Of a DNA stretch of 64,000 nt, positions 46,967-61,970 are shown one piece after another. Position numbers and translations under genes: made by a program. The number at the start of each line of letters is the position of its first letter. The first letter of the stretch is position 1. The DNA lies in the IMG/VR virus record IMGVR_UViG_3300027759_004177, positions 292,866 through 356,865 of that record, one strand, 5' to 3'. The notes below the pieces were generated by a model that did not search any database, had not been told where the DNA came from, and worked only from the letters and a program-made list of their open reading frames with translations.

Positions 46967-47148
46967 TATTCTACTCCAAAATGTTTTAAAATATTGTCAC
47001 TGCTCTGATAAGGTTCGGCGGTGTGTGCAATATCAGCACACTCCCGCACAATGGCCTGGGCAAACTCTTCAACCTTGAGTCGCCATATGGGGCTATGAGC
47101 AATGGTAAAGTGAGTGTCCTCGGCTATGCGTTGGATATTTTCGTTCAT
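46966..47148 (-). CDS. Hypothetical protein (MNENIQRIAED...)
   Basis: ATG at 47148 overlaps the vWA stop (ATGA); 60 aa. The track start at 47232 is probably too long. Confidence 0.6.
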   Translation of the reverse strand: MNENIQRIAEDTHFTIAHSPIWRLKVEEFAQAIVRECADIAHTAEPYQSSDNILKHFGVE

Positions 47149-48389
47149 TTCACAGCATCTTCGTAGTGGGCATACACACCAAACTCGGGCTGGGCTTCTT
47201 TGTTGCCTTTGATAATCCACACAGTATCGCAATACTGCTCGACCTGATCAGGGCTCCAACCAAAGAAACAAAAGTCAGTAAACATGATCAATTTCTTGGG
47301 TTCGATGTTGTTTTCTTCCAACCAAGTCCAAACACAATGCGGATCTGTACCACCGCCACCACCCGGTACAAAGCTCTCAATGTCAGCGATATTGTCCGAT
47401 GTGAATATTTCGTGATTGTGTACTTGGGTATCCCAACCCAACACATGGATACGATATTCGTCGTAACTTTCCATGATACCTTTGATTTCACTCAAGAAAA
47501 TCTTGAGATCTGGGTCAGTGATACTACCTGAAGTATCAATACCAATCACAACATCAATCTGGTTGCCGGGCAACATGCCGGGCATGACAGCATCCATATG
47601 CCACCCTCTGCGGCTGGGACGTTGCCAAGTAAAATCACTCTTGATAGAACTTTCAACCTGCTGATTGATCAACTCACGCCAGTTAATCACAGGTTCGGTT
47701 AGGTCCTTGATCATGCGTTTGACACCACCGGGCAAATTACCTGCACCCGAAGCATTGGCGGCATTTAGTACTGCATCTTTGATTTCGTCGCGAATAGCCT
47801 TCTTTTCTTCTTCGCTCAGGCGTGGACGACCGTTGCCTGGCTTGTCGCCATCTTCGCCTTCACCACCTTCTCCGTCCAAATGTTCGTCTAGTAGACGCTT
47901 CATCAATTCATCAATGTTGATTTTGTCGGCATTGGCATACAAGTCATCATACACTTCTTCGGCACTCATACCTTTGTACTTCGAGTCGTACAGGGCAACG
48001 GGAATCTTGTCGCCAATACGTTGTTCTACCAGGTCCCAGTTTACGCAATAGTCATCGGCAATGTTCCACAGTTTTGGATCTCTGTTGCCACGACGTCCCA
48101 TATGGTCATAAACCGCATGAAGCACTTCATGTCCGACCAAGAATTCCAATTGCTTTAGGGGAAGGTTATTGACAAACTCTGAATTATAGTAAAATTTACG
48201 GCCGTCTGTGGCGGCAGTAGGACACCATTCATCTGCGTTGATAAGTGTTAGGCGGGTAGCAAGGTTGCCAAAGAATGGAGCACGGAGCAAAAGACCAATA
48301 CGTGCGGTAACCAGTTTTTCGCGGGCACTTGCATCCGTCTTGGGATCTGTTACTGTTACCGCTTTACTTTTTTCTGCTAGTGTAGTCAT
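47145..48389 (-). CDS. DUF2201-like protein: HExxH metallopeptidase-like N-terminus plus vWA domain
   Basis: AATDG, HEVLH, WNIADDY, WQRPSRR, IDTSGS (MIDAS), GGGGT, FTD. ATG at 48389 has SD AGGAG. Confidence 0.88.
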   Translation of the reverse strand: MTTLAEKSKAVTVTDPKTDASAREKLVTARIGLLLRAPFFGNLATRLTLINADEWCPTAATDGRKFYYNSEFVNNLPLKQLEFLVGHEVLHAVYDHMGRRGNRDPKLWNIADDYCVNWDLVEQRIGDKIPVALYDSKYKGMSAEEVYDDLYANADKINIDELMKRLLDEHLDGEGGEGEDGDKPGNGRPRLSEEEKKAIRDEIKDAVLNAANASGAGNLPGGVKRMIKDLTEPVINWRELINQQVESSIKSDFTWQRPSRRGWHMDAVMPGMLPGNQIDVVIGIDTSGSITDPDLKIFLSEIKGIMESYDEYRIHVLGWDTQVHNHEIFTSDNIADIESFVPGGGGGTDPHCVWTWLEENNIEPKKLIMFTDFCFFGWSPDQVEQYCDTVWIIKGNKEAQPEFGVYAHYEDAVK

Positions 48390-48413
48390 TCTGTTCGCTC
48401 CTGTATTATATAT

Positions 48414-48442
48414 ATTATACATTTAATTGATTTTTTGGTCAA
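48414..48442 (-). promoter_or_regulatory. Sigma70-type promoter of the vWA gene
   Basis: TTGACC, 17-nt spacer, TATAAT, with TG at the extended -10 position. Confidence 0.8.
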
Positions 48443-48734
48443 CCTTTTGGTTAGCACGGTTTTTTCGTTGATTAAACACATCTTCCATGCCCTGTACACT
48501 AGAACCAGGCTTGATCACTTGTGGTGCTGTGGGCTGGCTGACTGCGACTGTGGCACGTGGTTCAGGTGCTGTGGGACGGCAAATATCATTGCCGCTGATG
48601 CTTCGGCTGATCTTGCAGTCTTGATCGCGAACAGCACTGATACCATGGTCTGCTAGACCTTTACCGGTGGTTTCTACCGAAGCCACACTAGCTAGACCGA
48701 CTATGAGCAAAGGACCTATGACCATTGTGGCCAC
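48423..48734 (-). CDS. Hypothetical protein
   Basis: 103 aa; hydrophobic N-terminus and two Cys; start uncertain (GTG 48734 or ATG 48725). Confidence 0.5.
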   Translation of the reverse strand: MATMVIGPLLIVGLASVASVETTGKGLADHGISAVRDQDCKISRSISGNDICRPTAPEPRATVAVSQPTAPQVIKPGSSVQGMEDVFNQRKNRANQKVDQKIN

Positions 48735-48913
48735 CTTAACATAAAATAAGTACGGTCTGCTGGGTCGGGGATATATAACATCATTTGTCCTAGTGCTATC
48801 TTATTGTGGCCTAACCAAGTACCAATGGATTCTTTGTTATCTAACCACCATTTACGATTCATGACTACACAAATCTCTGGAGTATCTAGATCTGGACAAA
48901 AGTCATAGTTCAT
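48716..48913 (-). CDS. Hypothetical protein
   Basis: 65-aa ORF following the AAA+ gene. Confidence 0.5.
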   Translation of the reverse strand: MNYDFCPDLDTPEICVVMNRKWWLDNKESIGTWLGHNKIALGQMMLYIPDPADRTYFMLRWPQWS

Positions 48914-48968
48914 AAGAATAAGGAGGACTTACAGCGTGTGCCTGCCCCCTGCCTGTGACAGCAACCTT

Positions 48969-50078
48969 TTACTTACCGCCTGCCGCGATAATGTACTTGC
49001 CGTACCGCTTGTGGAACTCATCAAAGTTCTTGAGCTTGCCTGGTACCAGGGGTAAGTTGTAAGTGGTCAACGCAACTCTAGCACCCATAACAACCAATTC
49101 AGTGGTAAAGTTATCCATCATAAAGCGGAAGAAGTTATCGGCCATACCGTGCCATTGGCTGATCTTTTCCTTGCCTAGTTTGGCATAAGCATCTTGCAAT
49201 TCATAGCACATGGACACAGTCAAGGAGTACATGGCACTGACTTCTTTGACATCTAAAGTCTTGACCTTACCTGCCAAGATTTCGCTTGGGTTAGGCATCT
49301 TGCTGGCAACCTTGCGGTGTGCCATAAACTTAACTGCCAAGCCATCACCGATAGTACCAGCAATCAAGTCCGACAATTCTGCATCTGTGGCATCTTCGTC
49401 ATGTAAGAATTCACTTACAAAGTGCCATGAACGTGGTGTTGCAAAGGCACGGCTGGCTGAGCGTGGGTTAAAATCCATCAAGTCTTGCTTGGCAAAACCA
49501 ATGTAACCTACCACGTCCTTGTGCTCACGATTCTGCACAGCCCACTCGTTCCATGAGTCGTAATCAGCACGTACTTCCAAATGTACGAAACGATTTGCCA
49601 GGGGCATTGGCATACGGAAACTAACACCTTTGTCGCTTTCACGATTACCCGCGGCCACAATTACCACATTCTTGGGCAGGTGATACTTGCCTAGTCTGCG
49701 ATTGAGAATCAACTGATAGGCCGCGGCCTGTACTGCCGGGGCCGCCACATTCATCTCGTCTAAGAACAAGGTCACAACAGGGTATTCTGCGGCCAACTCT
49801 GGTGTTGGTAAGTCCACTGGCTCGGCCCAGTCCATTTTGCCCAACTCTTTGTTATAAAACGGAATACCACGCAGATCTGTGGGCTCCATTTGGCCTAGAC
49901 GTAAGTCAATGGTATAACCGCCTAATTCTTGGGTAAGACCGGCTACCAATTCACTTTTACCTACTCCGGGAGGACCCCAAATAAAAACAGGGCGTTGGAC
50001 TTTGAATGCACGAAGCAAGCGGCTACGGCATTCATTGGGTGTTACTGTACGGCTTTCACTAATAGTTGTACTCATCAC
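48969..50078 (-). CDS. MoxR-type AAA+ ATPase
   Basis: Walker A GPPGVGKS, Walker B LFLDEMN, QLILNR, AAGN, LANRF, TPRSW; partner vWA gene downstream. Confidence 0.92.
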   Translation of the reverse strand: MMSTTISESRTVTPNECRSRLLRAFKVQRPVFIWGPPGVGKSELVAGLTQELGGYTIDLRLGQMEPTDLRGIPFYNKELGKMDWAEPVDLPTPELAAEYPVVTLFLDEMNVAAPAVQAAAYQLILNRRLGKYHLPKNVVIVAAGNRESDKGVSFRMPMPLANRFVHLEVRADYDSWNEWAVQNREHKDVVGYIGFAKQDLMDFNPRSASRAFATPRSWHFVSEFLHDEDATDAELSDLIAGTIGDGLAVKFMAHRKVASKMPNPSEILAGKVKTLDVKEVSAMYSLTVSMCYELQDAYAKLGKEKISQWHGMADNFFRFMMDNFTTELVVMGARVALTTYNLPLVPGKLKNFDEFHKRYGKYIIAAGGK

Positions 50079-50119
50079 AGGCTCCTAAAAATTACTACAA
50101 AATTAACTACTATAGAACT

Positions 50120-50148
50120 ATTATACAATTAAATGATTTTACGGTCTA
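50120..50148 (-). promoter_or_regulatory. Sigma70-type promoter of the AAA+ gene
   Basis: TAGACC, 17-nt spacer, TATAAT, with extended TG; SD AGGAG downstream. Confidence 0.7.
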
Positions 50149-50464
50149 CTAAATTTTCACGATCGCTGTAAATTTTATTACCACGATCACGAATTAAATC
50201 AGCCGAACCTTGCGGATCTGCGTCAAACATACCACGAATATCTTCGTCTGAAATACCTTCCGCCACATTCATGGTATAGATTTCATAATGTCTTTGGCTG
50301 TTGGCCCTAGCACGAAGCATCAAATGATTGACCATACTGCCCAACCGAACCGGTGGATCTTCATTCTTGAGTGTGGCCCAAGTGGCTTCTTTTTCATAGT
50401 CTGTGATATTGATCACAGCCTCAAGCCCCGTGCAGTCCCACGACACAAGAAACAGGTTGCTCAT
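50129..50464 (-). CDS. Hypothetical protein
   Basis: 111-aa ORF; ATGA overlap with the upstream gene. Confidence 0.7.
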   Translation of the reverse strand: MSNLFLVSWDCTGLEAVINITDYEKEATWATLKNEDPPVRLGSMVNHLMLRARANSQRHYEIYTMNVAEGISDEDIRGMFDADPQGSADLIRDRGNKIYSDRENLVDRKII

Positions 50465-50649
50465 ACTTCGGCGATTTCCCAGGCCATGATACGGCGTTCC
50501 ATTTCGGCATCAAGTACATCACGAATAGCCCGTTCGCCTTCAGTCAATGTAGTCGAGCTCCAAAACGTATCTAGCAAGGATGATAATTCTTGAGCCGGCA
50601 TAGTCCGGGCCATTGCTTGGTATTCTTCTCGGGTACGATATTTCGACAT
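50461..50649 (-). CDS. Hypothetical protein
   Basis: 62 aa; SD AGGAG. Confidence 0.65.
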   Translation of the reverse strand: MSKYRTREEYQAMARTMPAQELSSLLDTFWSSTTLTEGERAIRDVLDAEMERRIMAWEIAEV

Positions 50650-50663
50650 TTCGATCTCCTGTT

Positions 50664-50702
50664 TAAAAAGTACTGGTTTTTATTTTGAGTCAAAAACCAG
50701 TA
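50664..50702 (-). terminator. 11-bp inverted repeat followed by CTTTTT; terminator or operator
   Basis: TACTGGTTTTT-N10-AAAAACCAGTA (50671-50702), directly upstream of the SD of ORF 50649. Confidence 0.4.
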
Positions 50703-50770
50703 AAAAGTGACTGCGTCGTTTCTGGGGTATCAAGGCTCCCCAAGGACCGCACGGCCCCATCACAGCCTTA
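50702..50770 (-). ncRNA. Candidate structured RNA (three-way junction plus pseudoknot)
   Basis: GC-rich intergenic stretch. Pairings found by eye: GUGAU/GUCAC, GGGCC-GUGC-GGUCC, UGGGG/CCCCA, and loop AGCCUU with the 5' AAGGCU. Confidence 0.35.
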
Positions 50771-51049
50771 TCTGGAAAGATTCATTACACGACCTTGGAA
50801 CTCGTTGAAGCTGACTCTCCAAGGCACAAATATTTCATGACCCACACGACTGTCAGGACCGGATTGATTAGTATCGGTGTCGGCACCAAAATGATCACGG
50901 GTAACACGGATCTTGTAGGCCTGATAACCTTGCTCGGTATTGTGAGCATCAATCACTTGACCTTCGATAAAACAATCATCACGTCCCGCCATGGGTTTGA
51001 AATCATAGCTACGGATGATATCACCATCTACTATTGTTAGTCCAACCAT
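50768..51049 (-). CDS. Hypothetical protein
   Basis: ATG at 51049 with SD AGGAG; 93 aa. The track start at 51088 lies inside the promoter. Confidence 0.7.
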   Translation of the reverse strand: MVGLTIVDGDIIRSYDFKPMAGRDDCFIEGQVIDAHNTEQGYQAYKIRVTRDHFGADTDTNQSGPDSRVGHEIFVPWRVSFNEFQGRVMNLSR

Positions 51050-51079
51050 TTTCTGCTCCTTATTAATCACTATACATAC

Positions 51080-51108
51080 ATTATACATTTTAATGAATTA
51101 TGGATCAA
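51080..51108 (-). promoter_or_regulatory. Sigma70-type promoter
   Basis: TTGATC, 17-nt spacer, TATAAT, with extended TG. Confidence 0.75.
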
Positions 51109-51124
51109 CCAGAATTTTAAGTAC

Positions 51125-51150
51125 AAAAAACCCCCTAAAAACAGGGGGTT
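51125..51150 (-). terminator. Rho-independent terminator of the 51177-54617 operon
   Basis: AACCCCCT-GTTTTT-AGGGGGTT followed by TTTT on the minus strand, 27 nt after the stop codon. Confidence 0.8.
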
Positions 51151-51176
51151 ATGGGTGTTGTTTTTAGGCAACAGAG

Positions 51177-52229
51177 TTACTTTTTACCTATATACTCGTG
51201 ACTGTAACAAACCCTATAAGCATCTCGAACAGTGGTTGTACCGCCGTAACCTGCCATTTTTCTAGCAGTACCATCCTTGTTCAAGTAACTACCTACCCTG
51301 GATTTTTTATTCATTGACGTAGGGCGCCATAGTTCGGATTTTTCACGATGCTCGCCGAAACTAGGGTGTGCTGTTTTACTAAAGTATCTTAGACCATGGC
51401 TAACATAGATTTCGGCAATGGCATCACTAAATCGTGTACCTATGCCCATGCCTTGAAACTCGGGTAAGATCACAGTACGATGGCCACGCCAGTAACTGTG
51501 AATATCTCTATTAGTTGAATGTATAGCAGCATGAAACCCAATGGGTTTATCACCTAAGAGTAAGACATAGTAATGAGCACTTTTACTAATAGCAGTATCT
51601 AAATAGTGATACTTACTGAAATATCTCCAATAGTCGACACTTGAGCTTTTGATGGTGAGTGCAAGTTTTGGTCTTGTCCCCAATCGAAGAAGTGACCTCC
51701 GATTTTCTAAGACACAGAGATCTGTGTCATAAACGTATTCAGGATCTAACCATTCTACTATGTCTCTATGGCAACTTGCAATATATAGTGGATCTGTTTT
51801 ACCCTGCCGATTGTAGAACTTGCGAATACTTAGGGCAAGACTTTTAGCAGTATCGCGATCAACAACTGACGTAAACTCGTCAACTGTGCCGAGTCCTTGA
51901 TCTAAACTAATGGCCATTTCAAAGCGATGATACTCGCCATTGCTTAAGGTATTGGGTGGTCGGAACCAAGTAGGAATACTACGCAGTCCGCAGGCAAGTA
52001 AGAGTTCTTCGCCACGTTCCGGAGTAGAGAAGTTTTCTATTGTAGTGCGAGCGTTATCTACTACAGGCTGACGTAGTTCACCTAGGCTACGCAGGATAGT
52101 GCTTTTACCACTACCGCTTGTGCCTACAATTAATACAATACCATCAGTTGGAAGCTCGGGGATAGTTACGCCGCTTTCCTTATAGTCTGTAATATCGTAC
52201 TTCTTTTTAATTTCTTCTAAGTAACTCAT
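51177..52229 (-). CDS. ABC-ATPase fused to a GNAT acetyltransferase
   Basis: Walker A GTSGSGKS, signature LSNGE, Walker B VDEF, H-loop SCH; C-terminal RTVILPEFQGMGIG (acetyl-CoA motif A). No transmembrane segment. Start is ATG 52229 or 52235. Confidence 0.88.
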   Translation of the reverse strand: MSYLEEIKKKYDITDYKESGVTIPELPTDGIVLIVGTSGSGKSTILRSLGELRQPVVDNARTTIENFSTPERGEELLLACGLRSIPTWFRPPNTLSNGEYHRFEMAISLDQGLGTVDEFTSVVDRDTAKSLALSIRKFYNRQGKTDPLYIASCHRDIVEWLDPEYVYDTDLCVLENRRSLLRLGTRPKLALTIKSSSVDYWRYFSKYHYLDTAISKSAHYYVLLLGDKPIGFHAAIHSTNRDIHSYWRGHRTVILPEFQGMGIGTRFSDAIAEIYVSHGLRYFSKTAHPSFGEHREKSELWRPTSMNKKSRVGSYLNKDGTARKMAGYGGTTTVRDAYRVCYSHEYIGKK

Positions 52230-53017
52230 ATGCAAACCTTATAATTTCCTTGTTTAGACCAATCAGATATGCTAGTTACATTGGTGGGTATAGCAGTACT
52301 AGGCCAAACAAACAAGTAACCGTTACCGAGATCAAATCTCTTTAGAAAATTTATACTAGAACCTTCTCCGTATGGAGCTGAGGAGTATAATACTTTCCCG
52401 TCAGCATCTAACGCTTCATAACCGTTGTTAATAGGCACAGGATTTTTTTTAGTTTTTCTAGTCTGGTGAATTTTATAAGAACTTGCGTTGGGTGTTGCAA
52501 AATTTTGTTCTTCTAAGTAAATTGACTTGTGCCCTAAGTCCTCTCCGTAAATTAAAAGAATACTAGTTAGTACTGTACAATTGGCGGCCGTTATTGTCTT
52601 ATTGGCATAATCTCGATACTCCTGAATCGCCAACGGCATAAGAATTCCAGGATCTCCTTTCCATCCTTGCATGTCAATTGGTGAACGACGAGAAGGCAAC
52701 AATACAGAATTTGGTCTACGCACCCATAAAGAATCTTTGATAATTTCAAAGTATTGGCCACCGCTTTTGAGCATATGAGGTTTTGGTTTGGTATTGTAAA
52801 ACTTAATAGCATCGTTACTCTTAACATCAAATGCTCGATGATCGACCTTTACGTCAACAATGGTACCTGATCCGCCAACTCTTACTGCATTGGCATAAAA
52901 AGGTTTTAGGCCAAGAGCAATAACCTTTTCTGCTGTGGTGCTGTTAGGGACATTGATGCTCCAGGCCGTTTGAGCCCATGCAGCAATGTTAGTGGCAATT
53001 TGTTCTGTTAGTATCAT
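52226..53017 (-). CDS. Hypothetical protein, possible PD-(D/E)XK nuclease
   Basis: GGSGTIVDVKVDHRAFDVKS fits a D...(D/E)xK arrangement; overlaps both neighbours. Confidence 0.45.
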   Translation of the reverse strand: MILTEQIATNIAAWAQTAWSINVPNSTTAEKVIALGLKPFYANAVRVGGSGTIVDVKVDHRAFDVKSNDAIKFYNTKPKPHMLKSGGQYFEIIKDSLWVRRPNSVLLPSRRSPIDMQGWKGDPGILMPLAIQEYRDYANKTITAANCTVLTSILLIYGEDLGHKSIYLEEQNFATPNASSYKIHQTRKTKKNPVPINNGYEALDADGKVLYSSAPYGEGSSINFLKRFDLGNGYLFVWPSTAIPTNVTSISDWSKQGNYKVCI

Positions 53018-53571
53018 ATAATTAAATGTTTAAAGTAATTATAATGCTTTTCCAAGGTCCATGTCAATGGATCAATTGCCGTTCCATCGTGTGTTTGGTA
53101 AGTGGCAGAGAACACATTGGTATAGCGTTCAAATGGCAACCACATGTTGGGAGTTTTAGAGGCCCAACCTGCATCTTTGAGGGCCCGGTGTTTGGCACGA
53201 CTCAATCTTACTGTGGGCGGATTCAGAGCTTGCTCTACGGAGATACGGCCAGCCAACAGCAAGTCACGGATACGACTGGCTGGAATCAAATGTTCAAAGT
53301 CACAATCTTCGTCTGCACCAATTTCGTGATAGTGTGCTTTCATGCCATCACGTTGTTGGATACAGTATTCGTGATAACGACGTAGGTAGTAATCAATGTC
53401 ATTGCGGATTTCACGCAACAACTGTTGATCATTTACTACTTCACTATAATCAACTACCAAGCGATCCAAATTCTTTCGACAGTAAGCGGCCACGGTTCGA
53501 TAAGTATCTGCGGTGCGTGTGGTCTTACCGTAGTTGGGGGCAATAAAAGTGTCTAGGGATTCTTTTAACAT
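53014..53571 (-). CDS. Hypothetical protein with an EHxxP (HNH/His-Me-finger-like) motif
   Basis: DFEHLIPAS...LNPPTVRLSRAKH. Confidence 0.4.
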   Translation of the reverse strand: MLKESLDTFIAPNYGKTTRTADTYRTVAAYCRKNLDRLVVDYSEVVNDQQLLREIRNDIDYYLRRYHEYCIQQRDGMKAHYHEIGADEDCDFEHLIPASRIRDLLLAGRISVEQALNPPTVRLSRAKHRALKDAGWASKTPNMWLPFERYTNVFSATYQTHDGTAIDPLTWTLEKHYNYFKHLII

Positions 53572-54617
53572 TATGACGCCTCTGGAAACAAGCCAGGAAC
53601 AAAATTACCAGCTTCAATGCCTACTTTACTACCTTCTCCGTGATATGGTAAGTTTAATGCACCACCATTATGAATATGCAATTCACGCATGAAGTTGGCC
53701 ATGGCCATCGGAGCAGTCCAACCTGCACCTGGGTGAGTATGGTCCCATTGCAGTTTAGCTTTGGCATGAATAGTGGCTGAATTTCTATGAGTTTTCTTCA
53801 AGCTGTCTAACAAGGTTTTCATCCAATCTGCAGGCAATTTGATGTTGGGATTGGTACCAGCTAGACGTTGTAGTTCATGTAAGCCGATATAAACACCTTG
53901 ATCAATTTCTTCTCCAATTGGGAAAGTTTCCTTGATTGCCGACAGGATATTGTGTAGCACTCGACCAGACTCATCCAACTCAATGCCCTTTTGTGCATAT
54001 TTAAAGTGACTGAAGAAGTAATCGTTGTCGCCACGCAGATTATCGCTGGCACGGCTACCTTTGTCTTGCAGGTCAATGCCTAACTTATCAAACTGATCCT
54101 GCATGGTTCTAGCGTGTACTACCTTAATATCACGGCTACCATTTTTGTAGCGTACAAGAGCATTGCGATGTAAGTCACCTGGGGTAAGACGTTTAACACC
54201 TGTGTCGTTTAACATTTCAAAAGCATAACTAGCAAAGTTCTTGTCATCTGTAACAACCACCGCACAAGGAATTTCTGTAAAACCTAAGATAGCGGCACTG
54301 ATAGTACGATGCTGGCCGTCGTAAGTATCAATACGATCTGTATCTATTAATTGGCAAGCCGACACAGGTGAACAGATGCGACTGTCCCATTTCTTCATGA
54401 TATTGATAATATGTTTGTGTAGCACATCACGTTGGACTTCGTAGTCGATCCAAAGATCGGCAATGGCGACCATGGTGCTTTTGGGGAACGAATGACCGAT
54501 TCTGGCCGCAACTCGCCAGGCAGTTAATTCTCTATCAGTTACGTTGTAATGAGCTTTGAGTTGACGTTCAACTTCTTGAGCCACGTCAGTGAGTTTGCGT
54601 GTGAGACGCTTTGACAT
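53571..54617 (-). CDS. DGQHR/ParB-Srx-fold protein
   Basis: IDYEVQR...TYDGQHRT...IPCAVV; SD AAGGAG. Confidence 0.75.
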   Translation of the reverse strand: MSKRLTRKLTDVAQEVERQLKAHYNVTDRELTAWRVAARIGHSFPKSTMVAIADLWIDYEVQRDVLHKHIINIMKKWDSRICSPVSACQLIDTDRIDTYDGQHRTISAAILGFTEIPCAVVVTDDKNFASYAFEMLNDTGVKRLTPGDLHRNALVRYKNGSRDIKVVHARTMQDQFDKLGIDLQDKGSRASDNLRGDNDYFFSHFKYAQKGIELDESGRVLHNILSAIKETFPIGEEIDQGVYIGLHELQRLAGTNPNIKLPADWMKTLLDSLKKTHRNSATIHAKAKLQWDHTHPGAGWTAPMAMANFMRELHIHNGGALNLPYHGEGSKVGIEAGNFVPGLFPEAS

Positions 54618-54683
54618 TGTAATTCTCCTTCGTTGCCCGACACAATGCGGGATTGGTTAATAAAACTGCTACTTCTAATTACT

Positions 54684-54712
54684 ATTATACGCTCTTTTTC
54701 TGCGGTTGTCAA
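54684..54712 (-). promoter_or_regulatory. Perfect-consensus sigma70 promoter
   Basis: TTGACA (54712-54707), 17-nt spacer, TATAAT (54689-54684). Confidence 0.9.
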
Positions 54713-54731
54713 CCATCTAAGTTAGTGATCA

Positions 54732-55118
54732 CTAACCTTGTGATTCTATATTATCTAAATATGATGCTAAGTCATTGCCGTGTAAGGTCAGCATCATGGC
54801 TTCTTCCTCTTCAAACACTATAATTTTTTGACGTTTGAGCAGGTAGTACATGCTTTTAAACTGTCGTTCTAATTGCAACAGATGATGATTGGTCAGTTCT
54901 TCAGGCAAAGCAAATTCATAACTTTGTAGTTTGAGCACAGCCTTGACAAATTGTAGTCCTTGAAGACTCAACCTTAGGCTGGTGTCGTCTGTGGGATTCT
55001 TCCACCAACGCAGTTGTAGGTCGGTAGTTTGGCCAATTGGAAACTCAGCCTGTTCTACAAATATTTTTGTGAGTTGACGTTGAGTGTAACGCTTATGGGA
55101 AGATTTTGTCGCCGGCAC
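54732..55118 (-). CDS. Hypothetical protein
   Basis: Open frame; start uncertain (GTG 55118 proposed; the track gives 55193). Confidence 0.6.
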   Translation of the reverse strand: MPATKSSHKRYTQRQLTKIFVEQAEFPIGQTTDLQLRWWKNPTDDTSLRLSLQGLQFVKAVLKLQSYEFALPEELTNHHLLQLERQFKSMYYLLKRQKIIVFEEEEAMMLTLHGNDLASYLDNIESQG

Positions 55119-55380
55119 GTAACAGTACCACACTGAACTTGTCAGTCTTAAACAAGGTGTTGAGTTTCTTGCAGAGATTAATTGCATGGCCACTGTTACT
55201 GAAACTTACTTTTTTGTACTTGGGGCCAGGGTAACTCACTAAAATATTGTGTGTCTTGAGATTGATAGGTTGATTGTCGTAGAACACCGCCCAGATACCT
55301 TCAGAGGCCAGCACTTGCTCGCTCTTGTAAGTGGTTTTGTTAACGTGGTCCAACAACACAGTTGGCTTGGGTCTAGACAT
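55093..55380 (-). CDS. Hypothetical protein
   Basis: 95 aa; SD AAGGA; upstream GATAAATA box at 55406-55413. Confidence 0.75.
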   Translation of the reverse strand: MSRPKPTVLLDHVNKTTYKSEQVLASEGIWAVFYDNQPINLKTHNILVSYPGPKYKKVSFSNSGHAINLCKKLNTLFKTDKFSVVLLRAGDKIFP

Positions 55381-55429
55381 TTTCAGTTATCCTTGATATA
55401 CTGTTTATTTATCTCTTAATATACGTATA

Positions 55430-55648
55430 TTATTTAAAACCGCCACCGTCCATGCTGATATCAGTTTTGATGATGGAATTTTCAGTATTTTTACAGAATC
55501 CACTGATGGTGGCCAGCAACTCGTAAATTTCGGCATGCAAGTTGCGAGCTTCTTGAGCATTCAGTGTTAAGATTTTGCCATTGCTTTGATTCATGGCTCT
55601 AACACGATCGTTAAACATGCGTACATGGACAGATACGTTATTGTCCAT
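55430..55648 (-). CDS. Hypothetical protein
   Basis: 72-aa ORF in the coupled series. Confidence 0.65.
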   Translation of the reverse strand: MDNNVSVHVRMFNDRVRAMNQSNGKILTLNAQEARNLHAEIYELLATISGFCKNTENSIIKTDISMDGGGFK

Positions 55649-56114
55649 TGGCTTCTCGCATGGCTTCTATCATGCGGTCTTGAGTTTTGAATGGACCTTG
55701 ATATTCGTAACGATTCAGTGTGATAAGTTTTGGACAGTAGGCACGAACCCAGGTTGAACTGAATTTAATAATGTAGTAGCCGGCACAGAAGAAACTTTTA
55801 CTTTTGCTACCTTTGGTGTAGATGGGCAAGTAACGTTGCACATCTAACACTTCGTTGTTGGGTTGTGTGTTGGTGGGAAATCCATACACATCATACACAT
55901 CTAGTTTTTCTTTCTTGGGTTTTTCAGCCTTGACAAATTCGATGTTGTATTTTTTACTGATCATCTTGATTGATGGAAACAGTTCTCTTTGCTCATCGTG
56001 TACATAAGCAAAGCCGCCTTCTTCAATGGCCTGGATGGTGGCAATCTTTTCTCCACCTTCTTCTACAATCCAAAATTTATTTTTTACAACAGGTTTAGCA
56101 ATAATATCACTCAT
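55638..56114 (-). CDS. Hypothetical protein
   Basis: 158 aa; SD AAGGAG. Confidence 0.75.
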   Translation of the reverse strand: MSDIIAKPVVKNKFWIVEEGGEKIATIQAIEEGGFAYVHDEQRELFPSIKMISKKYNIEFVKAEKPKKEKLDVYDVYGFPTNTQPNNEVLDVQRYLPIYTKGSKSKSFFCAGYYIIKFSSTWVRAYCPKLITLNRYEYQGPFKTQDRMIEAMREANGQ

Positions 56115-56123
56115 GGTGACTCC

Positions 56124-56483
56124 TTAAATAGCTTCTTGTAAGATCCATACCAACCAGATATAGAACGTGTAGTGAGCCAGCTGATCGGCTCCCAGTTGAA
56201 TCCAAAACTTTTGTGTGTTGGCATTTCGTGTGCCCCATTTGGCCTTGACGTAATCTATGTGATAATGTACAACACTATCTAAGAGACCGAACACCAAACC
56301 CACCGGTGCACTATTCACAAATACTGTCACTATGATGCCAGTAAACACGCCATGCATGACAGCATGTTCTATGCCTCCCATAAGACCATATGTGCCTTTT
56401 TGTTCGACCATGTATTCAAACTGCAATACGAAATCTGCAATCCAATGTTTGACAGCCATCACAAACAATAACAAAAAAATCAT
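56124..56483 (-). CDS. DUF3307-like membrane protein
   Basis: KHWIADFVLQ...HAVMHG...HYHIDYVK...LGADQLAH with hydrophobic helices. Confidence 0.7.
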   Translation of the reverse strand: MIFLLLFVMAVKHWIADFVLQFEYMVEQKGTYGLMGGIEHAVMHGVFTGIIVTVFVNSAPVGLVFGLLDSVVHYHIDYVKAKWGTRNANTQKFWIQLGADQLAHYTFYIWLVWILQEAI

Positions 56484-56650
56484 CTTTTAATAAACCAATA
56501 ATTTATCGCAGCAACCAACCAACTGATCGAAGCGTCAACATACTCTCCGCGACCAATCTGAGCACAACCGGCCATGATCAAAAAACCAATAAGAAACCAA
56601 GTGATTTCGGTGTAGTTACGCAAATACCACTGTCTAAAATTTTCTAACAT
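56480..56650 (-). CDS. 56-aa small membrane protein (MLENFRQWYLRNYTEITWFLIGFLIMAG...)
   Basis: Translated by hand; SD AAGGA; ATGA overlap with the next gene; two hydrophobic segments. Confidence 0.6.
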   Translation of the reverse strand: MLENFRQWYLRNYTEITWFLIGFLIMAGCAQIGRGEYVDASISWLVAAINYWFIKR

Positions 56651-56651
56651 A

Positions 56652-57647
56652 TTATTCCTTTTCTGGGTAACTTGCTTCTAAAAATCTAGTGTACTGTTCA
56701 GCGTATTCTGACATTTTTACTAGATCATATTTGCCGCAAAACTTTAAAAAATGGGCACCAATCATGGGGCGGTTAAGTGCCACGCTATTTCCATCTATGG
56801 TGCCACGGATTTTAACTTTGACGTCGTCGGGTTGTGCGGTTAGGTCAACTAGCACACGATTACGTTCATAGTCGTCCAGCACACGATGTTCCTGACCGTT
56901 GTGATCAGTCCAGCGTTGTAGCATTAGATTATTCCACGCAAAGCCTTTCGCTGTTTTATCGTTAAATGCCTCAATGAGTCCCACTTTATTTTTACTTCCC
57001 ACCTTACGCACCCCTGGGTATGCCGAGAAAATGTTATCTGTGGGGTCACCTCGCATACATTTTTCGAAAAGAATCCACTTAGGATCCGGAATTGTTTTTG
57101 GTTCCTTAGTTTTTTTATCTTTGACTGGGGCACCTTTCTTGTCGAAAATACCTTGAATAGTGTGGAGCTCATCTGCGATTCCGTTATATTGATTTACATT
57201 TTCTGCTAGTAGTTGATGAAAGTCTGTATCACTTGACACAATGGTATGATGATCACGTGGGTGGGCTTGTATCCAACCGGCAATCAAATCATCTGCTTCA
57301 AGTTCAGGGTGTTGTAATACTGTGCAGTTTGTTTTTGTGGCCAAGAAGTCTTTGAGAGTATCGAAGCTTTCCCAAAACAATGCATCTTCTTCAGCTTCTT
57401 TTTCTGTCAAGGCCGCACGAGCCACACTACGATTCTTTTTATAAGGCTCATAATAGTCTTTACGCCAACTACGACCTTCCAAGCAGAAAATAACGTGATC
57501 TGCCTTTTGATCTCTCCAGCTCTTATTAACACTATTTAGCGTTACCTGAATGGCGAAACCCAGCCTATCCCAAGTATCAGCTTGACGGTGTGCGGCATGC
57601 CTGGCACGGAAGAAAGTATTAGCGGTGTCAACAAGTAGATATCTCAT
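56652..57647 (-). CDS. rnh: T4-like RNase H / 5'-3' flap exonuclease
   Basis: YLLVDTAN, YKKNR, LEADDLIA, IVSSDTDFHQL, GDPTDNI. ATG at 57647 sits just downstream of a promoter. Confidence 0.88.
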   Translation of the reverse strand: MRYLLVDTANTFFRARHAAHRQADTWDRLGFAIQVTLNSVNKSWRDQKADHVIFCLEGRSWRKDYYEPYKKNRSVARAALTEKEAEEDALFWESFDTLKDFLATKTNCTVLQHPELEADDLIAGWIQAHPRDHHTIVSSDTDFHQLLAENVNQYNGIADELHTIQGIFDKKGAPVKDKKTKEPKTIPDPKWILFEKCMRGDPTDNIFSAYPGVRKVGSKNKVGLIEAFNDKTAKGFAWNNLMLQRWTDHNGQEHRVLDDYERNRVLVDLTAQPDDVKVKIRGTIDGNSVALNRPMIGAHFLKFCGKYDLVKMSEYAEQYTRFLEASYPEKE

Positions 57648-57653
57648 GTAGTT

Positions 57654-57682
57654 ATAATAGCATATAATGATTAAGTTGTCAA
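57654..57682 (-). promoter_or_regulatory. Sigma70-type promoter of rnh
   Basis: TTGACA, 17-nt spacer, TATTAT. Confidence 0.7.
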
Positions 57683-58372
57683 TAGCGTTTGGACATAATT
57701 TTGGTATAGGAATTCGGCCCAGGCGGTATGGGCATCTGGACCAAAATGATATGATCCAGGACGAACCGTTTCGAATCCCCGTTGCTTTAACCAATTGTAG
57801 TAAGTATATTCTGGACTGTATGGATGTATATAACTGTTGCCCCATTCAAATTTTAAAGTTTTGGTAAATGGTTCAAATGTGTTAAAAAATATGTGTGGTA
57901 TTTTGTTCTGGTCAAGATATCTATGCAGTTGGTGTATTTTTTCGTGTGCGTTTCTAACAGCATGATCGTAGTTGATGTTTAAAATGTAACCGCGGTATTG
58001 ATCTTTGATTTCTGTAGGCCAATCTTCACCAATGCCACCGGCATTGACTTGCCAATACTGTTCAGTGCCTTCGTGCCACCACTCTTCTCGTTCCCATGTT
58101 GACCACCCAATGATGGCCAACTCGGGTTTTACAATGTCAAGGGCCTTGTAAGTGGTACGAATGATTCTGTCGTTGCTACTGGCTGACTCTGCATCACATT
58201 GTAGTATGGCACCCAGCATGTTGGCCAACTCACAGCCGTAGCTGACACGTAGATTATCTGGATGCGGTTCACGTGCCATGTTCCAATATAGGCTATCGTC
58301 TTGGGCAAACGAATAGGTGTTTACTGCTTCGGCACCAGCACTATGGCTGTCACCATTTACATACAAGATCAC
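57671..58372 (-). CDS. SGNH-like hydrolase or acyltransferase
   Basis: ILYVNGDSHSAG, AESASSN, GWS, SYHFG. Confidence 0.55.
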   Translation of the reverse strand: MILYVNGDSHSAGAEAVNTYSFAQDDSLYWNMAREPHPDNLRVSYGCELANMLGAILQCDAESASSNDRIIRTTYKALDIVKPELAIIGWSTWEREEWWHEGTEQYWQVNAGGIGEDWPTEIKDQYRGYILNINYDHAVRNAHEKIHQLHRYLDQNKIPHIFFNTFEPFTKTLKFEWGNSYIHPYSPEYTYYNWLKQRGFETVRPGSYHFGPDAHTAWAEFLYQNYVQTLLTT

Positions 58373-58755
58373 GATACTTCAGTACGCCCGTCACCAATAT
58401 CTCTACGTTCAATGTTGCGTGGACGTGCATCTATTGGCTGATTGGCTTCCCATTGTTCAAAGTTTTCTGCCACTACATTTTTACACACATCAGCAAACCA
58501 ACGGTCTACCATGTCTGCATCTGTATCTGCAGGTTTGTGTTGATAACCAGCACGTACCAGATTGGCAATAAACTTGTCATTCCAATCTAGCTCAAATGCA
58601 CCGTTGCCAATGTTGTCTGGATCTAAATCTACACTAAGAATCGCCACATAAGGTTCGCCCTTTTCTGTGGCCAAGTCCTTGGCAGATTTTTTTCGAGTCT
58701 TGGGTGCTTCTGGTTTTGTTTCGGGTTTCTTTTTAAAGCGATCAAATATTCCCAT
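58369..58755 (-). CDS. Hypothetical protein
   Basis: 128 aa; SD AAGGA. Confidence 0.75.
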   Translation of the reverse strand: MGIFDRFKKKPETKPEAPKTRKKSAKDLATEKGEPYVAILSVDLDPDNIGNGAFELDWNDKFIANLVRAGYQHKPADTDADMVDRWFADVCKNVVAENFEQWEANQPIDARPRNIERRDIGDGRTEVS

Positions 58756-60201: not shown

Positions 60202-60407
60202 ATTAAGTGTTCCTGGGGAGCATGATATCTGTATTCAAACACAGGTTCACCGGGGCCGACCCAGACTGCTGTGCCACGATATGCATGTTGCAACCAGATT
60301 TGACGGTTAGTGAGTTCACATTGTTTCGGCCACCAGACAAATACGTAATCCCAGTCGGCTCGTGCATGAAACTGATCATAGTGGTCCATGCCCGGTATGG
60401 GAGCCAT
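60183..60407 (-). CDS. Hypothetical protein
   Basis: ATG at 60407 immediately follows the queE stop; 74 aa, Trp-rich. Confidence 0.55.
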   Translation of the reverse strand: MAPIPGMDHYDQFHARADWDYVFVWWPKQCELTNRQIWLQHAYRGTAVWVGPGEPVFEYRYHAPQEHLIWQLQQ

Positions 60408-60408
60408 A

Positions 60409-61964: not shown

Positions 61965-61970
61965 TGATTT

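What the first reader, a model, noticed from the sequence alone, without database searches (positions are those of the whole stretch)
51125..54712. Self-contained four-gene operon: DGQHR, HNH-like, PD-(D/E)XK-like and ABC-ATPase-GNAT
Seen: a perfect TTGACA-17-TATAAT promoter, four overlapping genes and a clean terminator. Motifs are DGQHR, EHLIP, D...DVK, and a full ABC cassette fused to an acetyl-CoA-binding GNAT without membrane partner. Established: a DGQxR ParB/Srx NTPase domain paired with an EHxxP HNH domain is the architecture of GmrSD and SspE modification-sensing nucleases, and acyl-transfer enzymes such as Mu Mom protect phage DNA. Inference: a phage-borne conflict system, with NTP-dependent sensing and nucleases against host or competing phage DNA and ATP-driven acetylation for self-protection. 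An anti-defence module is the alternative. I do not know this four-gene combination from a described system.
Basis: partly seen in the sequence, partly recalled or inferred. Interest (0 to 1): 0.8.

Follow-up and report, generated by a model that had tools for sequence, protein, structure and literature searches.

The report
Mosaic early-gene island in jumbo phage
The four tightly packed genes are real, but they are three independently swapping modules in a variable early-gene island of an uncultured 357-kb phage: an undescribed ParB-like plus small "EHxxP" protein pair, an optional third gene, and an ATPase-acetyltransferase that others had already predicted to modify phage DNA.

Summary
Four co-directional minus-strand genes have overlapping stops and starts. 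They follow a perfect TTGACA-17-TATAAT promoter and end at a terminator-like hairpin.

The reading as one self-contained four-gene system is only partly supported. The window is IMG/VR contig 3300027759_004177 (356,865 bp). A relative whose flanks are 95-96% identical at nucleotide level keeps gene D but replaces promoter, A, B and C with unrelated genes. The right-hand break falls exactly at D's ATG.

- **A and B:** A (ParB/Srx-like, DGQHR) and B (185 aa, invariant EH..P) form a pair seen in about 1,000 protein clusters, all from uncultured phages. Most A-B loci lack C and D. Deeply divergent A-B alleles occupy the same site.
- **C:** It is rare. It keeps an invariant E...D...DxK pattern, but its confident model matches no solved fold.
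- **D:** It belongs to a widespread phage ABC-ATPase-GNAT family (phrog_11143). Iyer and colleagues had already predicted that family to acylate DNA bases.
- **Nuclease folds:** B's HNH nature rests on motifs and weak profile hits only. Foldseek found nothing for B.

My best reading is a conflict-type variable island. A-B would act as a split, GmrSD-like NTP-gated nuclease, and D would be an independent DNA modifier. Both functions are inferred, not shown.

The parts
54721..54736 (.). Perfect palindrome or hairpin GTTAGTGATCACTAAC. It overlaps the stop codon of the upstream 153-aa gene, lies 8 nt before the -35 hexamer, and marks the left edge of the swap cassette.
   Evidence: It occurs once in the window. 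The motif GTTAGTnnnnACTAAC lies 116-146 nt upstream of the A start codon in 11 of 77 related loci, including loci that lack the upstream 153-aa gene. Only 10 other matches occur in 718 kb. Nucleotide homology to relatives with other cassettes ends at 54741-54707.
54684..54712 (-). Consensus sigma-70-type promoter TTGACA-17-TATAAT driving A.
   Evidence: 12 of 12 matches. At least 10 of 12 matches, mostly with 17-nt spacing, are found upstream of A in 73 of 78 related loci.
53571..54617 (-). Gene A, 348 aa: ParB/Srx-like protein. Boxes IDYEVQRD (57-64), YDGQHR (99-104) and FEMLNDTG (133-140), followed by a C-terminal part of about 200 aa with no assignment.
   Evidence: phrog_1033 'ParB-like partition protein' at E 2e-5, and in 30 of 30 members. 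Atlas neighbours are ParB/Sulfiredoxin, DUF6551 and ParB_N. 1,076 clusters, none named and none with a Pfam domain. No Pfam, NCBIfam or PDB sequence hit. No structure was predicted here.
53014..53571 (-). Gene B, 185 aa: small protein with invariant E93-H94-x-x-P97. It is a candidate His-Me (HNH-like) nuclease and the partner of A.
   Evidence: 960 clusters and 145 representatives at 50% identity, nearly all standalone proteins of about 185 aa. Family-wide invariants are Y81, E/D93, H94, P97, P119, R149, Y150 and H176; position 128 is D, H or N. HNH_4 gives weak hits in 8 of 30 members, best E 0.017. The Cas9 HNH region scores E 0.003 in PADLOC. The AF2 model has pLDDT 92.3, but Foldseek against PDB found nothing.
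53038..53067 (-). Second perfect TTGACA-18-TATAAT site, inside the 3' end of B and 21 nt before the ATG of C. It may be an internal promoter, or a by-product of coding for the peptide LTWTLEKHYN.
   Evidence: It is perfect in only 8 of 75 related B genes, and these only partly coincide with C or D lying downstream.
52226..53017 (-). Gene C, 263 aa: rare rider gene with invariant E30, D55 and D64-x-K66. This is a PD-(D/E)XK-like pattern lying in a predicted helix and beta-hairpin.
   Evidence: Only 9 clusters. Invariant residues come from a 13-sequence alignment. The AF2 model has pLDDT 86.7. Foldseek found no PDB match. BFVD matched only uncharacterised phage proteins, the best being A0A6J5LH57 at E 1e-8 and TM 0.56. 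No Pfam hit.
51177..52235 (-). Gene D, 352 aa from TTG 52235, more likely 350 aa from ATG 52229: ABC-type ATPase (residues about 25-175) fused to a GNAT acyltransferase (about 195-310).
   Evidence: phrog_11143 matched over the full length at E 1e-79. Pfam Acetyltransf_1 passes its cut-off, and ABC_tran also hits. The signature and Walker B motifs align with EttA and MJ0796. 91 cultured-phage records hold homologues, including Tenacibaculum phage pT24 at 34% identity over 100% of the query. Homology to relatives carrying other cassettes resumes exactly at 52229.
51129..51150 (-). Intrinsic-terminator-like hairpin followed by a T-run, closing the transcription unit.

Best explanation
The region is a hypervariable, host-RNA-polymerase-transcribed (probably early) island of an uncultured 357-kb jumbo phage. 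It is assembled from modules that recombine independently.

**Module 1.** A swappable cassette made of a short hairpin, a consensus sigma-70 promoter, gene A and gene B. A is a ParB/Srx-fold protein that probably binds a nucleotide triphosphate. B is a small protein with an invariant EH..P centre that I take to be a His-Me finger nuclease. I infer that the two work together like a split GmrSD/SspE-type enzyme: A senses or clamps DNA under NTP control, and B cuts. Because deeply divergent A-B alleles replace one another at the same site between otherwise near-identical phages, the likely targets are host DNA or the DNA of competing phages.

**Module 2.** Gene C, an occasional rider, found next to B in most cases. 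Its conserved residues mimic a PD-(D/E)XK nuclease site.

**Module 3.** Gene D, a member of a known phage family in which an ABC ATPase drives a GNAT. Others have predicted that it acylates DNA bases. It works on its own and does not depend on A, B or C.

**Shown:** gene order, promoter, family sizes, independent assortment, cassette boundaries, ParB-like sequence signal in A, ABC and GNAT domains in D.

**Inferred:** NTP binding by A, nuclease activity of B and C, the A-B complex, the substrate of D, and early timing.
For: **Mosaic structure**
- A and B are adjacent in essentially all of 78 A-anchored loci, while C is present in 4 and D in 7.
- The space between A and B, and the region downstream of B, carry many unrelated inserts, including HNH-type homing-endonuclease genes.
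- L126 matches window 56802..54741 at 96.5% and 52229..47000 at 95.1% nucleotide identity. Between these stretches it has 2.9 kb of other genes. L094, L099 and L114 also resume homology at 52229.
- L175 has A 91%, B 95%, C 45% and D 74% identity. L103 and L104 share flanks, but their B genes are 40% and 75% identical and neither has an A.

**A-B linkage across divergence**
- Type-2 alleles (A-like 400-423 aa at 15-20% identity, B at 34-43%) sit at the same site. They keep the ID..QR and D.QH motifs.
- A still more distant B (P0310) is preceded by a 401-aa protein that matches the A motifs (hhalign E 7e-5).

**A is ParB-like:**. Phage ParB-fold/DUF6551 proteins bind CTP or ATP (preprint 10.1101/2025.10.10.680097).

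**B:** invariant EH..P, position 128 as D, H or N, a beta-strand/helix arrangement around these residues, and weak HNH_4 and Cas9-HNH hits.

**GmrSD is a ParB plus HNH architecture** (PMC12839542).

**D:**. Its predicted role is stated in PMC7824862.

**Phage-only distribution:** only 3 hits among 185,579 species genomes, all on MAG contigs. No cultured phage holds A or B.

**Promoter conservation:**
Against: - No profile of GmrSD, BrxU, SspE, DndB, DUF262 or DUF1524 matches A or B.
- B's confident model has no Foldseek match to any HNH structure; the best hit has E 0.75.
- Profile searches of PDB sequences with B found nothing relevant.
- The Asn expected of an HNH motif (N117) is not conserved across the wider B family.
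- No fused A-B protein exists among 145 B representatives.
- The Arg of DGQHR is Thr in type-2 alleles.
- Some loci have B without A (L103, L104) or an A-like gene without B (L140, L148), so the pair is not obligatory.
- A was not modelled here.
- Nothing shows how a phage nuclease would spare the phage's own DNA.
- Locus counts include near-duplicate contigs, so they are not independent events.
Confidence: 0.45

Rival explanations
1. One reading: the four genes are one integrated restriction-modification-like system. A senses, B and C cut, and D acylates the phage's own DNA to protect it.
For: - All four genes overlap and share one promoter and one terminator.
- The full A-B-C-D order recurs in diverged relatives: L172/L173 with C 60% and D 71% identity, and L175 with C 45% and D 74%. 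L176 is partial.
- D abuts a B-family gene in 21 of about 60 D-anchored loci, including deeply divergent B alleles.
- C abuts B in 12 of 19 C-anchored loci.
Against: - About 90% of A-B loci lack D and about 95% lack C.
- About half of the loci with a close D have no A or B within reach.
- L126 keeps D after losing A-B-C.
- D homologues stand alone in T4-like, Mu-like and siphovirus genomes.
- Adjacency can be explained by all modules sharing one recombination hot spot.
Confidence: 0.15
2. A is a non-nucleolytic ParB-type NTP switch, acting as a DNA clamp, a partition or condensation factor, or a transcription regulator like KorB, Noc or DndB. B is its accessory or loading factor. The pair organises or regulates the large phage genome rather than attacking DNA.
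For: - PHROG families matched are annotated as ParB-like partition proteins.
- All three ParB N-domain boxes are recognisable in A.
- Phage ParB-fold/DUF6551 proteins bind CTP or ATP.
- A and B are strongly conserved, with 72-73% mean column identity.
- B has no structural match to a nuclease.
Against: - Cassette replacement and 15-20%-identity alleles at one site in near-identical phages are unusual for a housekeeping function.
- Some relatives lack A-B at this site altogether.
- No HTH or parS-like repeat was identified, though neither was searched for exhaustively.
- The invariant E-H pair in B suggests catalysis.
Confidence: 0.2
3. The hairpin-promoter-A-B(-C) unit is itself a selfish mobile nuclease cassette of the homing type. 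It spreads between co-infecting related phages and gives them no other function.
For: - The unit has sharp boundaries and its own promoter.
- It is found in at least two different genomic contexts, with the same upstream hairpin motif in both.
- It has nuclease-like motifs.
Against: - Classical homing-endonuclease genes are themselves inserted between A and B in most relatives, which marks A and B as conserved targets rather than parasites.
- About 1,000 clusters stay 70-80% identical over the full length.
- Homing cassettes of two or three genes are not the known pattern (my own knowledge).
Confidence: 0.08
4. The island is an anti-defence module. D acetylates a host defence protein or an RNA, as the GNATs AcrVA5 and Rac, or TmcA on tRNA, are known to do. 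A-B neutralises host defence nucleic acids or nucleotide signals.
For: - Likely early expression from a consensus host-type promoter.
- GNATs act on proteins and RNA as well as other substrates (PMC7824862 and PMC12839542).
- ParB/Srx proteins can degrade nucleotides (PMC10853773).
- The patchy distribution is typical of counter-defence genes.
Against: - There is no similarity to any characterised anti-defence protein.
- PADLOC and PHROG give no functional hit beyond generic domains.
- The only published prediction for the D family is DNA base modification.
Confidence: 0.12

Closest known systems
GmrSD / BrxU / SspE type IV restriction enzymes (ParB-like DUF262 NTPase fused to a DUF1524 HNH nuclease)
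   Same: A carries a DGQxR-type ParB/Srx motif. B carries a (D/E)HxxP centre followed by a polar D/H/N position. The order is the same, with the ParB-like part first and the EH part second. The pair is linked across deep divergence.
   Different: - The two parts are separate genes and are never fused in 145 B representatives.
- No profile-level similarity to DUF262, DUF1524 or the PADLOC models was found.
- The pair is phage-encoded and essentially absent from bacterial genomes.
- A has an extra C-terminal part of about 200 aa that remains unassigned.
- B has a long N-terminal helical hairpin.
- Activity and substrate are unknown.
Phage ABC-ATPase-GNAT fusion predicted to acylate DNA bases (Iyer et al. 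2013, as summarised in PMC7824862; phrog_11143)
   Same: D matches phrog_11143 end to end at E 1e-79. It is 34% identical over its full length to the Tenacibaculum phage pT24 region named as an example. It has the same two-domain order and no membrane partner.
   Different: Nothing separates D from that family. No member has been tested experimentally in the literature I could search. In this phage lineage D sits in a hot spot next to ParB-like cassettes, which has not been reported.
Plastic regions of T4-type phages, where early-promoter/stem-loop cassettes mediate modular shuffling (my own knowledge; not checked in the library)
   Same: The locus has a consensus host-type promoter preceded by a short conserved hairpin at the cassette edge, gene-exact recombination junctions, variable content between conserved flanks, and homing-endonuclease inserts.
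   Different: The phage lineage is different. The hairpin motif GTTAGTnnnnACTAAC is seen in only 11 of 77 loci. No experiment links it to recombination.
DndB / DpdB (ParB-like NTPases that accompany DNA-modification enzymes)
   Same: Both are ParB-superfamily proteins with a DGQHR-type motif encoded next to a DNA-modifying enzyme.
   Different: NCBIfam DGQHR and DndB models do not match A at E up to 0.1. Most A genes have no modification enzyme next to them. No Dnd or Dpd partner genes are present.

Membership tests
ParB/Srx superfamily (gene A) | Sequence-profile similarity to ParB N-terminal domain families | tested here: met
   phrog_1033 at E 2e-5 for A and matched by 30 of 30 family members, best 2e-7. 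Other ParB-like PHROGs match some members. Atlas neighbours carry ParB_N or DUF6551. Pfam ParB_N itself does not reach E 10.
ParB/Srx superfamily (gene A) | ParB/Srx fold with a nucleotide-binding GxxR box | tested here: inconclusive
   The boxes IDYEVQRD, YDGQHR and FEMLNDTG are invariant or nearly so. No structure of A was predicted because both prediction jobs went to B and C. R104 is Thr in type-2 alleles.
GmrSD / BrxU / SspE | N-terminal DUF262-type domain detectable by profile | tested here: not met
   No Pfam hit at E up to 10 in 30 members. No PADLOC GmrSD, BrxU or SspE hit at E up to 0.1.
GmrSD / BrxU / SspE | C-terminal DUF1524-type HNH domain with (D/E)HxxP | tested here: inconclusive
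   The EHLIP motif is invariant. There is no PF07510 hit, and the only link is an Atlas feature score of 0.72 to a cluster in which 16% of members carry GmrSD_C.
GmrSD / BrxU / SspE | Both domains in one polypeptide | tested here: not met
   A and B are separate genes in all loci. Of 145 B representatives none is fused to a ParB-like domain.
GmrSD / BrxU / SspE | NTP-dependent cleavage of modified DNA | not testable with these tools
   This needs biochemistry.
HNH / His-Me finger nucleases (gene B) | Beta-beta-alpha metal finger fold recognisable against solved structures | tested here: inconclusive
   The AF2 model has pLDDT 92.3 and pTM 0.85. Foldseek against PDB gave a best E of 0.75. The predicted order is strand 90-94 ending in E93-H94, strand 120-124, then helix 125-133 carrying position 128. 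That order is compatible with the fold, but it was judged by eye only.
HNH / His-Me finger nucleases (gene B) | Profile similarity to an HNH family above threshold | tested here: not met
   HNH_4 gives a best E of 0.017 in 8 of 30 members, below the gathering score, and appears in only 2 of 73 members of the wider family. The PADLOC Cas9 model scores E 0.003 over residues 18-118.
PD-(D/E)XK nucleases (gene C) | Conserved E ... D ... (D/E)xK residues on a helix and a beta-hairpin | tested here: met
   E30, D55, D64 and K66 are invariant in 13 sequences with identity down to 39%. They fall in helix 26-37 and in strands 56-58 and 61-69 of the model.
PD-(D/E)XK nucleases (gene C) | Restriction-endonuclease-like fold recognisable against solved structures or profiles | tested here: not met
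   Foldseek against PDB found no match at E up to 0.001, and no nuclease appears among the listed hits. BFVD returned only uncharacterised phage proteins. No Pfam or PDB-sequence hit.
Phage ABC-ATPase-GNAT fusion (phrog_11143; gene D) | Full-length similarity to the family | tested here: met
   phrog_11143 at E 1.3e-79, residues 5-351 against profile positions 14-351 of 357. 91 phage records match, 41 of them covering at least 80% of the query.
Phage ABC-ATPase-GNAT fusion (phrog_11143; gene D) | Intact ABC motifs and the GNAT acyl-CoA motif | tested here: met
   Walker A, LSNGE signature, Walker B-DE, H-loop and QGMGIG are all present. Acetyltransf_1 scores 26.2 bits against a cut-off of 20.7.
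Phage ABC-ATPase-GNAT fusion (phrog_11143; gene D) | Acylation of a DNA base | not testable with these tools
   This is a published prediction only (PMC7824862). I found no experimental report in the library.
ABC transporter | Membrane permease partner, and equivalog-level similarity to a transporter ATPase | tested here: not met
   The operon has no membrane protein. NCBIfam transporter models score about 30 bits or less against cut-offs of 130-970.
Described anti-phage defence systems (PADLOC-DB 2.0) | Any component model matched convincingly | tested here: not met
   There are only P-loop-level hits for D and hits with E above 0.002 for A and B.

The most novel reading that the evidence does not exclude
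A-B, with C as an optional second blade, is a new phage-specific family of split, NTP-gated nucleases used in phage-against-phage or phage-against-host warfare. Its alleles diversify and are exchanged as promoter-bearing cassettes. In the lineages that carry D, the D acyl mark on DNA is the self-label that A-B reads.
Probability: 0.15. Interest if true: 0.8.

Novelty: new variant of a known kind. Interest (0 to 1): 0.55.

Why it matters
The A-B pair is large (about 1,000 clusters at 90% identity), strongly conserved, confined to uncultured jumbo phages and entirely unannotated. It also sits at a site where alleles only 15-20% identical replace one another between phages whose flanks are 95% identical. 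That combination is a hallmark of genes in an arms race. If the pair is a split relative of GmrSD, it would show that phages deploy this enzyme logic themselves.

The locus also gives natural D-plus and D-minus sister phages. That makes the long-standing but untested prediction that ABC-GNAT enzymes acylate DNA directly checkable in metagenomes, through modification signals in long reads, and at the bench.

For annotation, the result warns against reading tight operons in phage plastic regions as functional systems.

Tried and rejected
- **Nucleotide and protein searches of cultured phages.** Megablast of the operon and of 24 kb around it found nothing. tblastn with A and B also found nothing.
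- **Profile searches of PDB sequences.** Alignments of A, B (narrow and wide) and C gave only chance hits.
- **Pfam scans at lenient thresholds.** Scans of all members of the A, B and C alignments gave no consistent family except weak HNH_4 for B.
- **Foldseek.** B and C against PDB gave nothing usable. C against BFVD returned only uncharacterised proteins.
- **Search for A-B fusion proteins.** None found. P0294 (347 aa) has an unrelated C-terminal extension and sits on a 1.6-kb contig.
- **Candidate divergent B genes.** The 167-aa gene before C in L184 and the 193-aa gene before D in L099 are not B relatives.
- **L126 replacement genes against A and B.** They are unrelated. One has a weak hit to the M.BseCI methyltransferase, E 0.003.
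- **Base composition.** The cassette is not unusual.
- **Papers not held.** Iyer et al. 2013 (PMC3763556) and Maindola et al. 2014 (PMC4241021) could not be read. Their content is cited only through later papers.
- **Neighbouring genes.** PHROG annotation of ten neighbours gave no functional context beyond a 5'-3' exonuclease and a MoxR-like ATPase.
- **Rejected: a transporter role for D.** There is no permease, and the family stands alone in phages.
- **Rejected: A-B as a universal core gene pair.** Close relatives lack it at this site.

Full report
**What is in the sequence**

The finding lies on the minus strand. Four open reading frames run head to tail:
- A, 54617..53571, 348 aa
- B, 53571..53014, 185 aa
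- C, 53017..52226, 263 aa
- D, 52235..51177, 352 aa from a TTG, or 350 aa from the ATG at 52229

The junctions are TAATG, ATGA and ATGA, so the genes are packed as tightly as genes can be.

A perfect TTGACA-17-TATAAT lies at 54712..54684. A 9-bp hairpin with a T-run lies at 51150..51129, 27 nt after the stop of D.

Perfect sigma-70 consensus sites are rare here. Only two occur in the 64 kb, against 0.04 expected, and both lie in this operon on this strand. The second, 53067..53038, sits inside the end of B, 21 nt before the ATG of C.

**Where the window comes from**

The window is part of IMG/VR contig IMGVR_UViG_3300027759_004177, 356,865 bp. The plus-strand half of the window encodes tail-fibre-like proteins.

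No cultured phage shares nucleotide similarity with the region. None encodes a relative of A or B. Among one genome for each of 185,579 bacterial and archaeal species, the A profile found only three contigs. All three are in metagenome-assembled genomes: Haliscomenobacter, Chitinophagales and Polynucleobacter. These are most simply phage contigs binned with bacteria.

**The four proteins one by one**

*Gene A.*
- It has no Pfam, NCBIfam or PDB-sequence match, even at lenient thresholds.
- It matches PHROG 1033, 'ParB-like partition protein', at E 2e-5, and all 30 sampled family members do so too.
- The protein-language-model atlas places it among phage clusters named ParB/Sulfiredoxin, or carrying DUF6551 and ParB_N.
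- Three stretches are invariant or nearly so: IDYEVQRD, YDGQHR and FEMLNDTG. They correspond in order to the three ParB N-domain boxes (my reading).
- A recent preprint reports that phage ParB-fold/DUF6551 proteins bind CTP or ATP (10.1101/2025.10.10.680097).
- I did not obtain a structure for A.

*Gene B.*
- The close family holds 960 clusters. At 50% clustering there are 145 representatives, almost all standalone proteins of about 185 aa.
- Across that wider family the invariant residues are Y81, E/D93, H94, P97, P119, R149, Y150 and H176. Position 128 is D, H or N in 64 of 73 sequences. The Asn at 117 is not conserved.
- AlphaFold gives a confident model with pLDDT 92.3. It has a long N-terminal helical hairpin. 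After that come a strand ending in E93-H94, two short helices, a strand at 120-124, and a helix carrying position 128.
- That order is compatible with a His-Me finger carrying an insertion. Even so, Foldseek found no solved structure resembling the model; the best hit had E 0.75.
- The only profile signals are weak: HNH_4 in 8 of 30 members, best E 0.017, and the HNH region of a Cas9 model at E 0.003.
- B is therefore a candidate nuclease, not a demonstrated one.

*Gene C.*
- It is rare, with only 9 clusters.
- E30, D55, D64 and K66 are invariant in sequences down to 39% identity.
- They fall on a helix and a beta-hairpin of a confident model, pLDDT 86.7. That is the classical layout of a PD-(D/E)XK site.
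- Foldseek found no solved relative. Among viral models it found only uncharacterised phage proteins.

*Gene D.*
- It is unambiguous. It matches phrog_11143 end to end at E 1e-79.
- It has an intact Walker A, signature, Walker B and H-loop, which align with EttA and MJ0796.
- It carries a GNAT domain that passes Pfam's threshold.
- Homologues occur in 91 cultured-phage records of very different kinds, including T4-like Aeromonas and Vibrio phages, Mu-like Burkholderia phage phiE255, Nonlabens, Leptospira, Streptococcus and Gordonia phages. In the five records I inspected their neighbours differ from one phage to the next.
[quoted passage not shown] It names Tenacibaculum phage pT24 as a carrier (PMC7824862). 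pT24 is one of my full-length hits.
- I found no experimental test of the family.

**Do the four genes belong together?**

I fetched loci anchored on each of A, D and C.

*Anchored on A* (78 usable loci):
- B follows A everywhere the contig allows.
- C is present in 4 loci and D in 7.
- In about three quarters of the loci, 355-583 bp separate A and B. This space holds at least five unrelated small gene families, some of them HNH-type homing endonucleases.
- The genes downstream of B differ from locus to locus.

*Anchored on D* (about 60 loci with D at least 70% identical):
- A B-family gene abuts D in 21 loci and lies within 2.2 kb in 8 more.
- About 30 loci have no A or B, although the same flanking genes are present: a 5'-3' exonuclease and three small genes upstream, and a MoxR-like ATPase downstream.
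- The 17 more distant D loci (33-46% identity) have no A or B at all.

*Anchored on C* (19 loci):
- C abuts B in 12 loci.
- One gene intervenes in 1 locus.
- In 6 loci C has no A or B nearby.

*The decisive comparison* is with close relatives at nucleotide level. L126 comes from a 219,879-bp contig.
- It matches window 56802..54741 at 96.5% and 52229..47000 at 95.1%.
- Between these stretches it carries 2.9 kb of unrelated genes. One of them has a weak hit to the M.BseCI methyltransferase.
- The right-hand break is the first base of D's ATG. The left-hand break is just upstream of the promoter.
- L094, L099 and L114 break at the same right-hand point.

The unit that is exchanged is therefore promoter-A-B-C. 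In this comparison D belongs to the backbone.

Other mosaics point the same way:
- L175 has A 91%, B 95%, C 45% and D 74% identity.
- L103 and L104 share about 92%-identical flanks with the window, yet carry B genes 40% and 75% identical and no A.
- The full A-B-C-D order does recur, in L172/L173, L175 and partly L176. But each module is far more often found without the others.

Counts of loci include near-duplicate contigs and are not independent events.

**The A-B pair as a diversifying cassette**

Many D-anchored loci carry a 'type-2' pair at the same site, between the same flanks. The A-like protein is 400-423 aa and only 15-20% identical to A. The B protein is 34-43% identical to B.

The A-like proteins keep I-D-x-x-x-Q-R and D-x-Q-H, but replace the Arg of DGQHR by Thr. 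A still more distant B (P0310) is again preceded by a 401-aa protein that matches the A motifs (hhalign E 7e-5).

The pairing is therefore old. The alleles are very divergent, and they replace one another between phages whose flanks are nearly identical.

The promoter travels with the cassette. A site with at least 10 of 12 matches lies upstream of A in 73 of 78 loci. In the window, the palindrome GTTAGTGATCACTAAC lies 8 nt before the -35 hexamer and overlaps the stop of the upstream gene. The motif GTTAGTnnnnACTAAC recurs at the same distance in 11 of 77 loci, including loci with a different upstream gene. Only 10 further matches occur in 718 kb.

**How it most likely works**

*Shown:*
- The island is transcribed from a host-type consensus promoter.
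- It consists of independently assorting modules.
- A has a ParB-like sequence signature.
- D is an ABC-GNAT fusion of a known family.

*Inferred:*
- A binds an NTP and DNA.
- B is a His-Me nuclease that works with A, in the manner of GmrSD, BrxU or SspE, which join a ParB-like NTPase to an HNH nuclease (architecture as described in PMC12839542).
- C is an optional second nuclease.
- D uses ATP to drive acyl transfer to a nucleic acid, most likely DNA, as predicted in the literature.

Cassette swapping, deep allelic divergence, phage-only distribution and the probable early promoter all fit a role in conflict with the host or with co-infecting phages. I put 0.45 on this composite explanation. 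The mosaic part is well supported. The enzymology is the weak part.

**Rivals**

The rivals are listed separately.

**Comparison with known systems and novelty**

The A-B pair works, by my inference, like GmrSD. It fails the membership tests that could be run: no profile similarity to DUF262 or DUF1524, no fusion, and no match to the PADLOC models.

D is a member of a described but untested family.

The overall locus resembles the plastic early regions of T4-type phages (my own knowledge).

I rate the finding a new variant of a known kind, with interest 0.55. The pair is large, conserved, unannotated and evolving like an arms-race gene. But the 'four-gene system' is not a unit, and the nuclease claims remain unproven.

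Noticed in passing
L005:7028-7510, L029:1491-1937, L039:7049-7459, L013:7053-8045 and many others; the equivalent point in the window is 53571-53573: In about three quarters of related phages the A/B junction holds an inserted small gene from at least five unrelated families. Several have HNH-type homing-endonuclease motifs (one hits HNH_3). The window has no insert at this point.
   Followed up: partly
window 54721-54736: A perfect 16-bp palindrome, GTTAGTGATCACTAAC, overlaps the stop of the upstream gene 8 nt before the -35 hexamer. The motif GTTAGTnnnnACTAAC recurs upstream of A in 11 of 77 loci, in two different genomic contexts. It could be a recombination or regulatory element at the cassette edge.
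   Followed up: partly
window 53038-53067: A second perfect TTGACA-18-TATAAT lies inside the 3' end of B, just before C. It encodes the conserved peptide LTWTLEKHYN. It is perfect in only 8 of 75 relatives, so whether it acts as a promoter is open.
   Followed up: partly
window 48414-62010, minus strand: Five of the seven sigma-70-like sites with at least 11 of 12 matches lie on the minus strand between 48 and 62 kb, against about 2.3 expected in the whole window by simple shuffling. This suggests a block of host-polymerase-transcribed genes. A TTGACA/TATAAT consensus would be unusual if the host were a Bacteroidota species, as two of the three MAG assignments would suggest (my own knowledge of Bacteroidota promoters).
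   Followed up: no
L126:2063-5000: A sister phage with 95-96% identical flanks carries a different cassette in place of promoter-A-B-C. It includes a 402-aa protein with a weak hit to the M.BseCI adenine methyltransferase (E 0.003). The hot spot may therefore collect DNA-modification genes.
   Followed up: partly
L001:4863-6595 (Burkholderia phage phiE255 gp29-gp30): In this Mu-like phage the D homologue gp29 overlaps a putative formyltransferase gp30, directly after the tail-fibre genes. That is the position phage Mu gives to its DNA-modification gene mom (the Mu layout is from my own knowledge).
   Followed up: no
window 11-9001: A single open reading frame of 2,996 aa on the plus strand, followed by a run of large plus-strand genes. 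The 664-aa product of 14657-16651 resembles distal tail-fibre proteins and an intramolecular chaperone domain of T4-like phages over its C-terminal part only.
   Followed up: no
window 47145-50078: A MoxR-like AAA ATPase (phrog_1297, E 4e-92) lies next to a 425-aa protein of phrog_1314, which PHROGs labels 'HNH endonuclease'. The pair is conserved downstream of the island in many relatives.
   Followed up: no
L090, L091, L092: The only A homologues in the species-genome collection lie on contigs of metagenome-assembled genomes assigned to Haliscomenobacter, Chitinophagales and Polynucleobacter. They are either mis-binned phage DNA or hints to the host.
   Followed up: no
L172:3552-4004: In one relative with the full A-B-C-D order, the B gene is called as only 148 aa. 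It lacks the first 36 or so residues and is separated from A by about 110 nt. B may be truncated at its N-terminus there.
   Followed up: no
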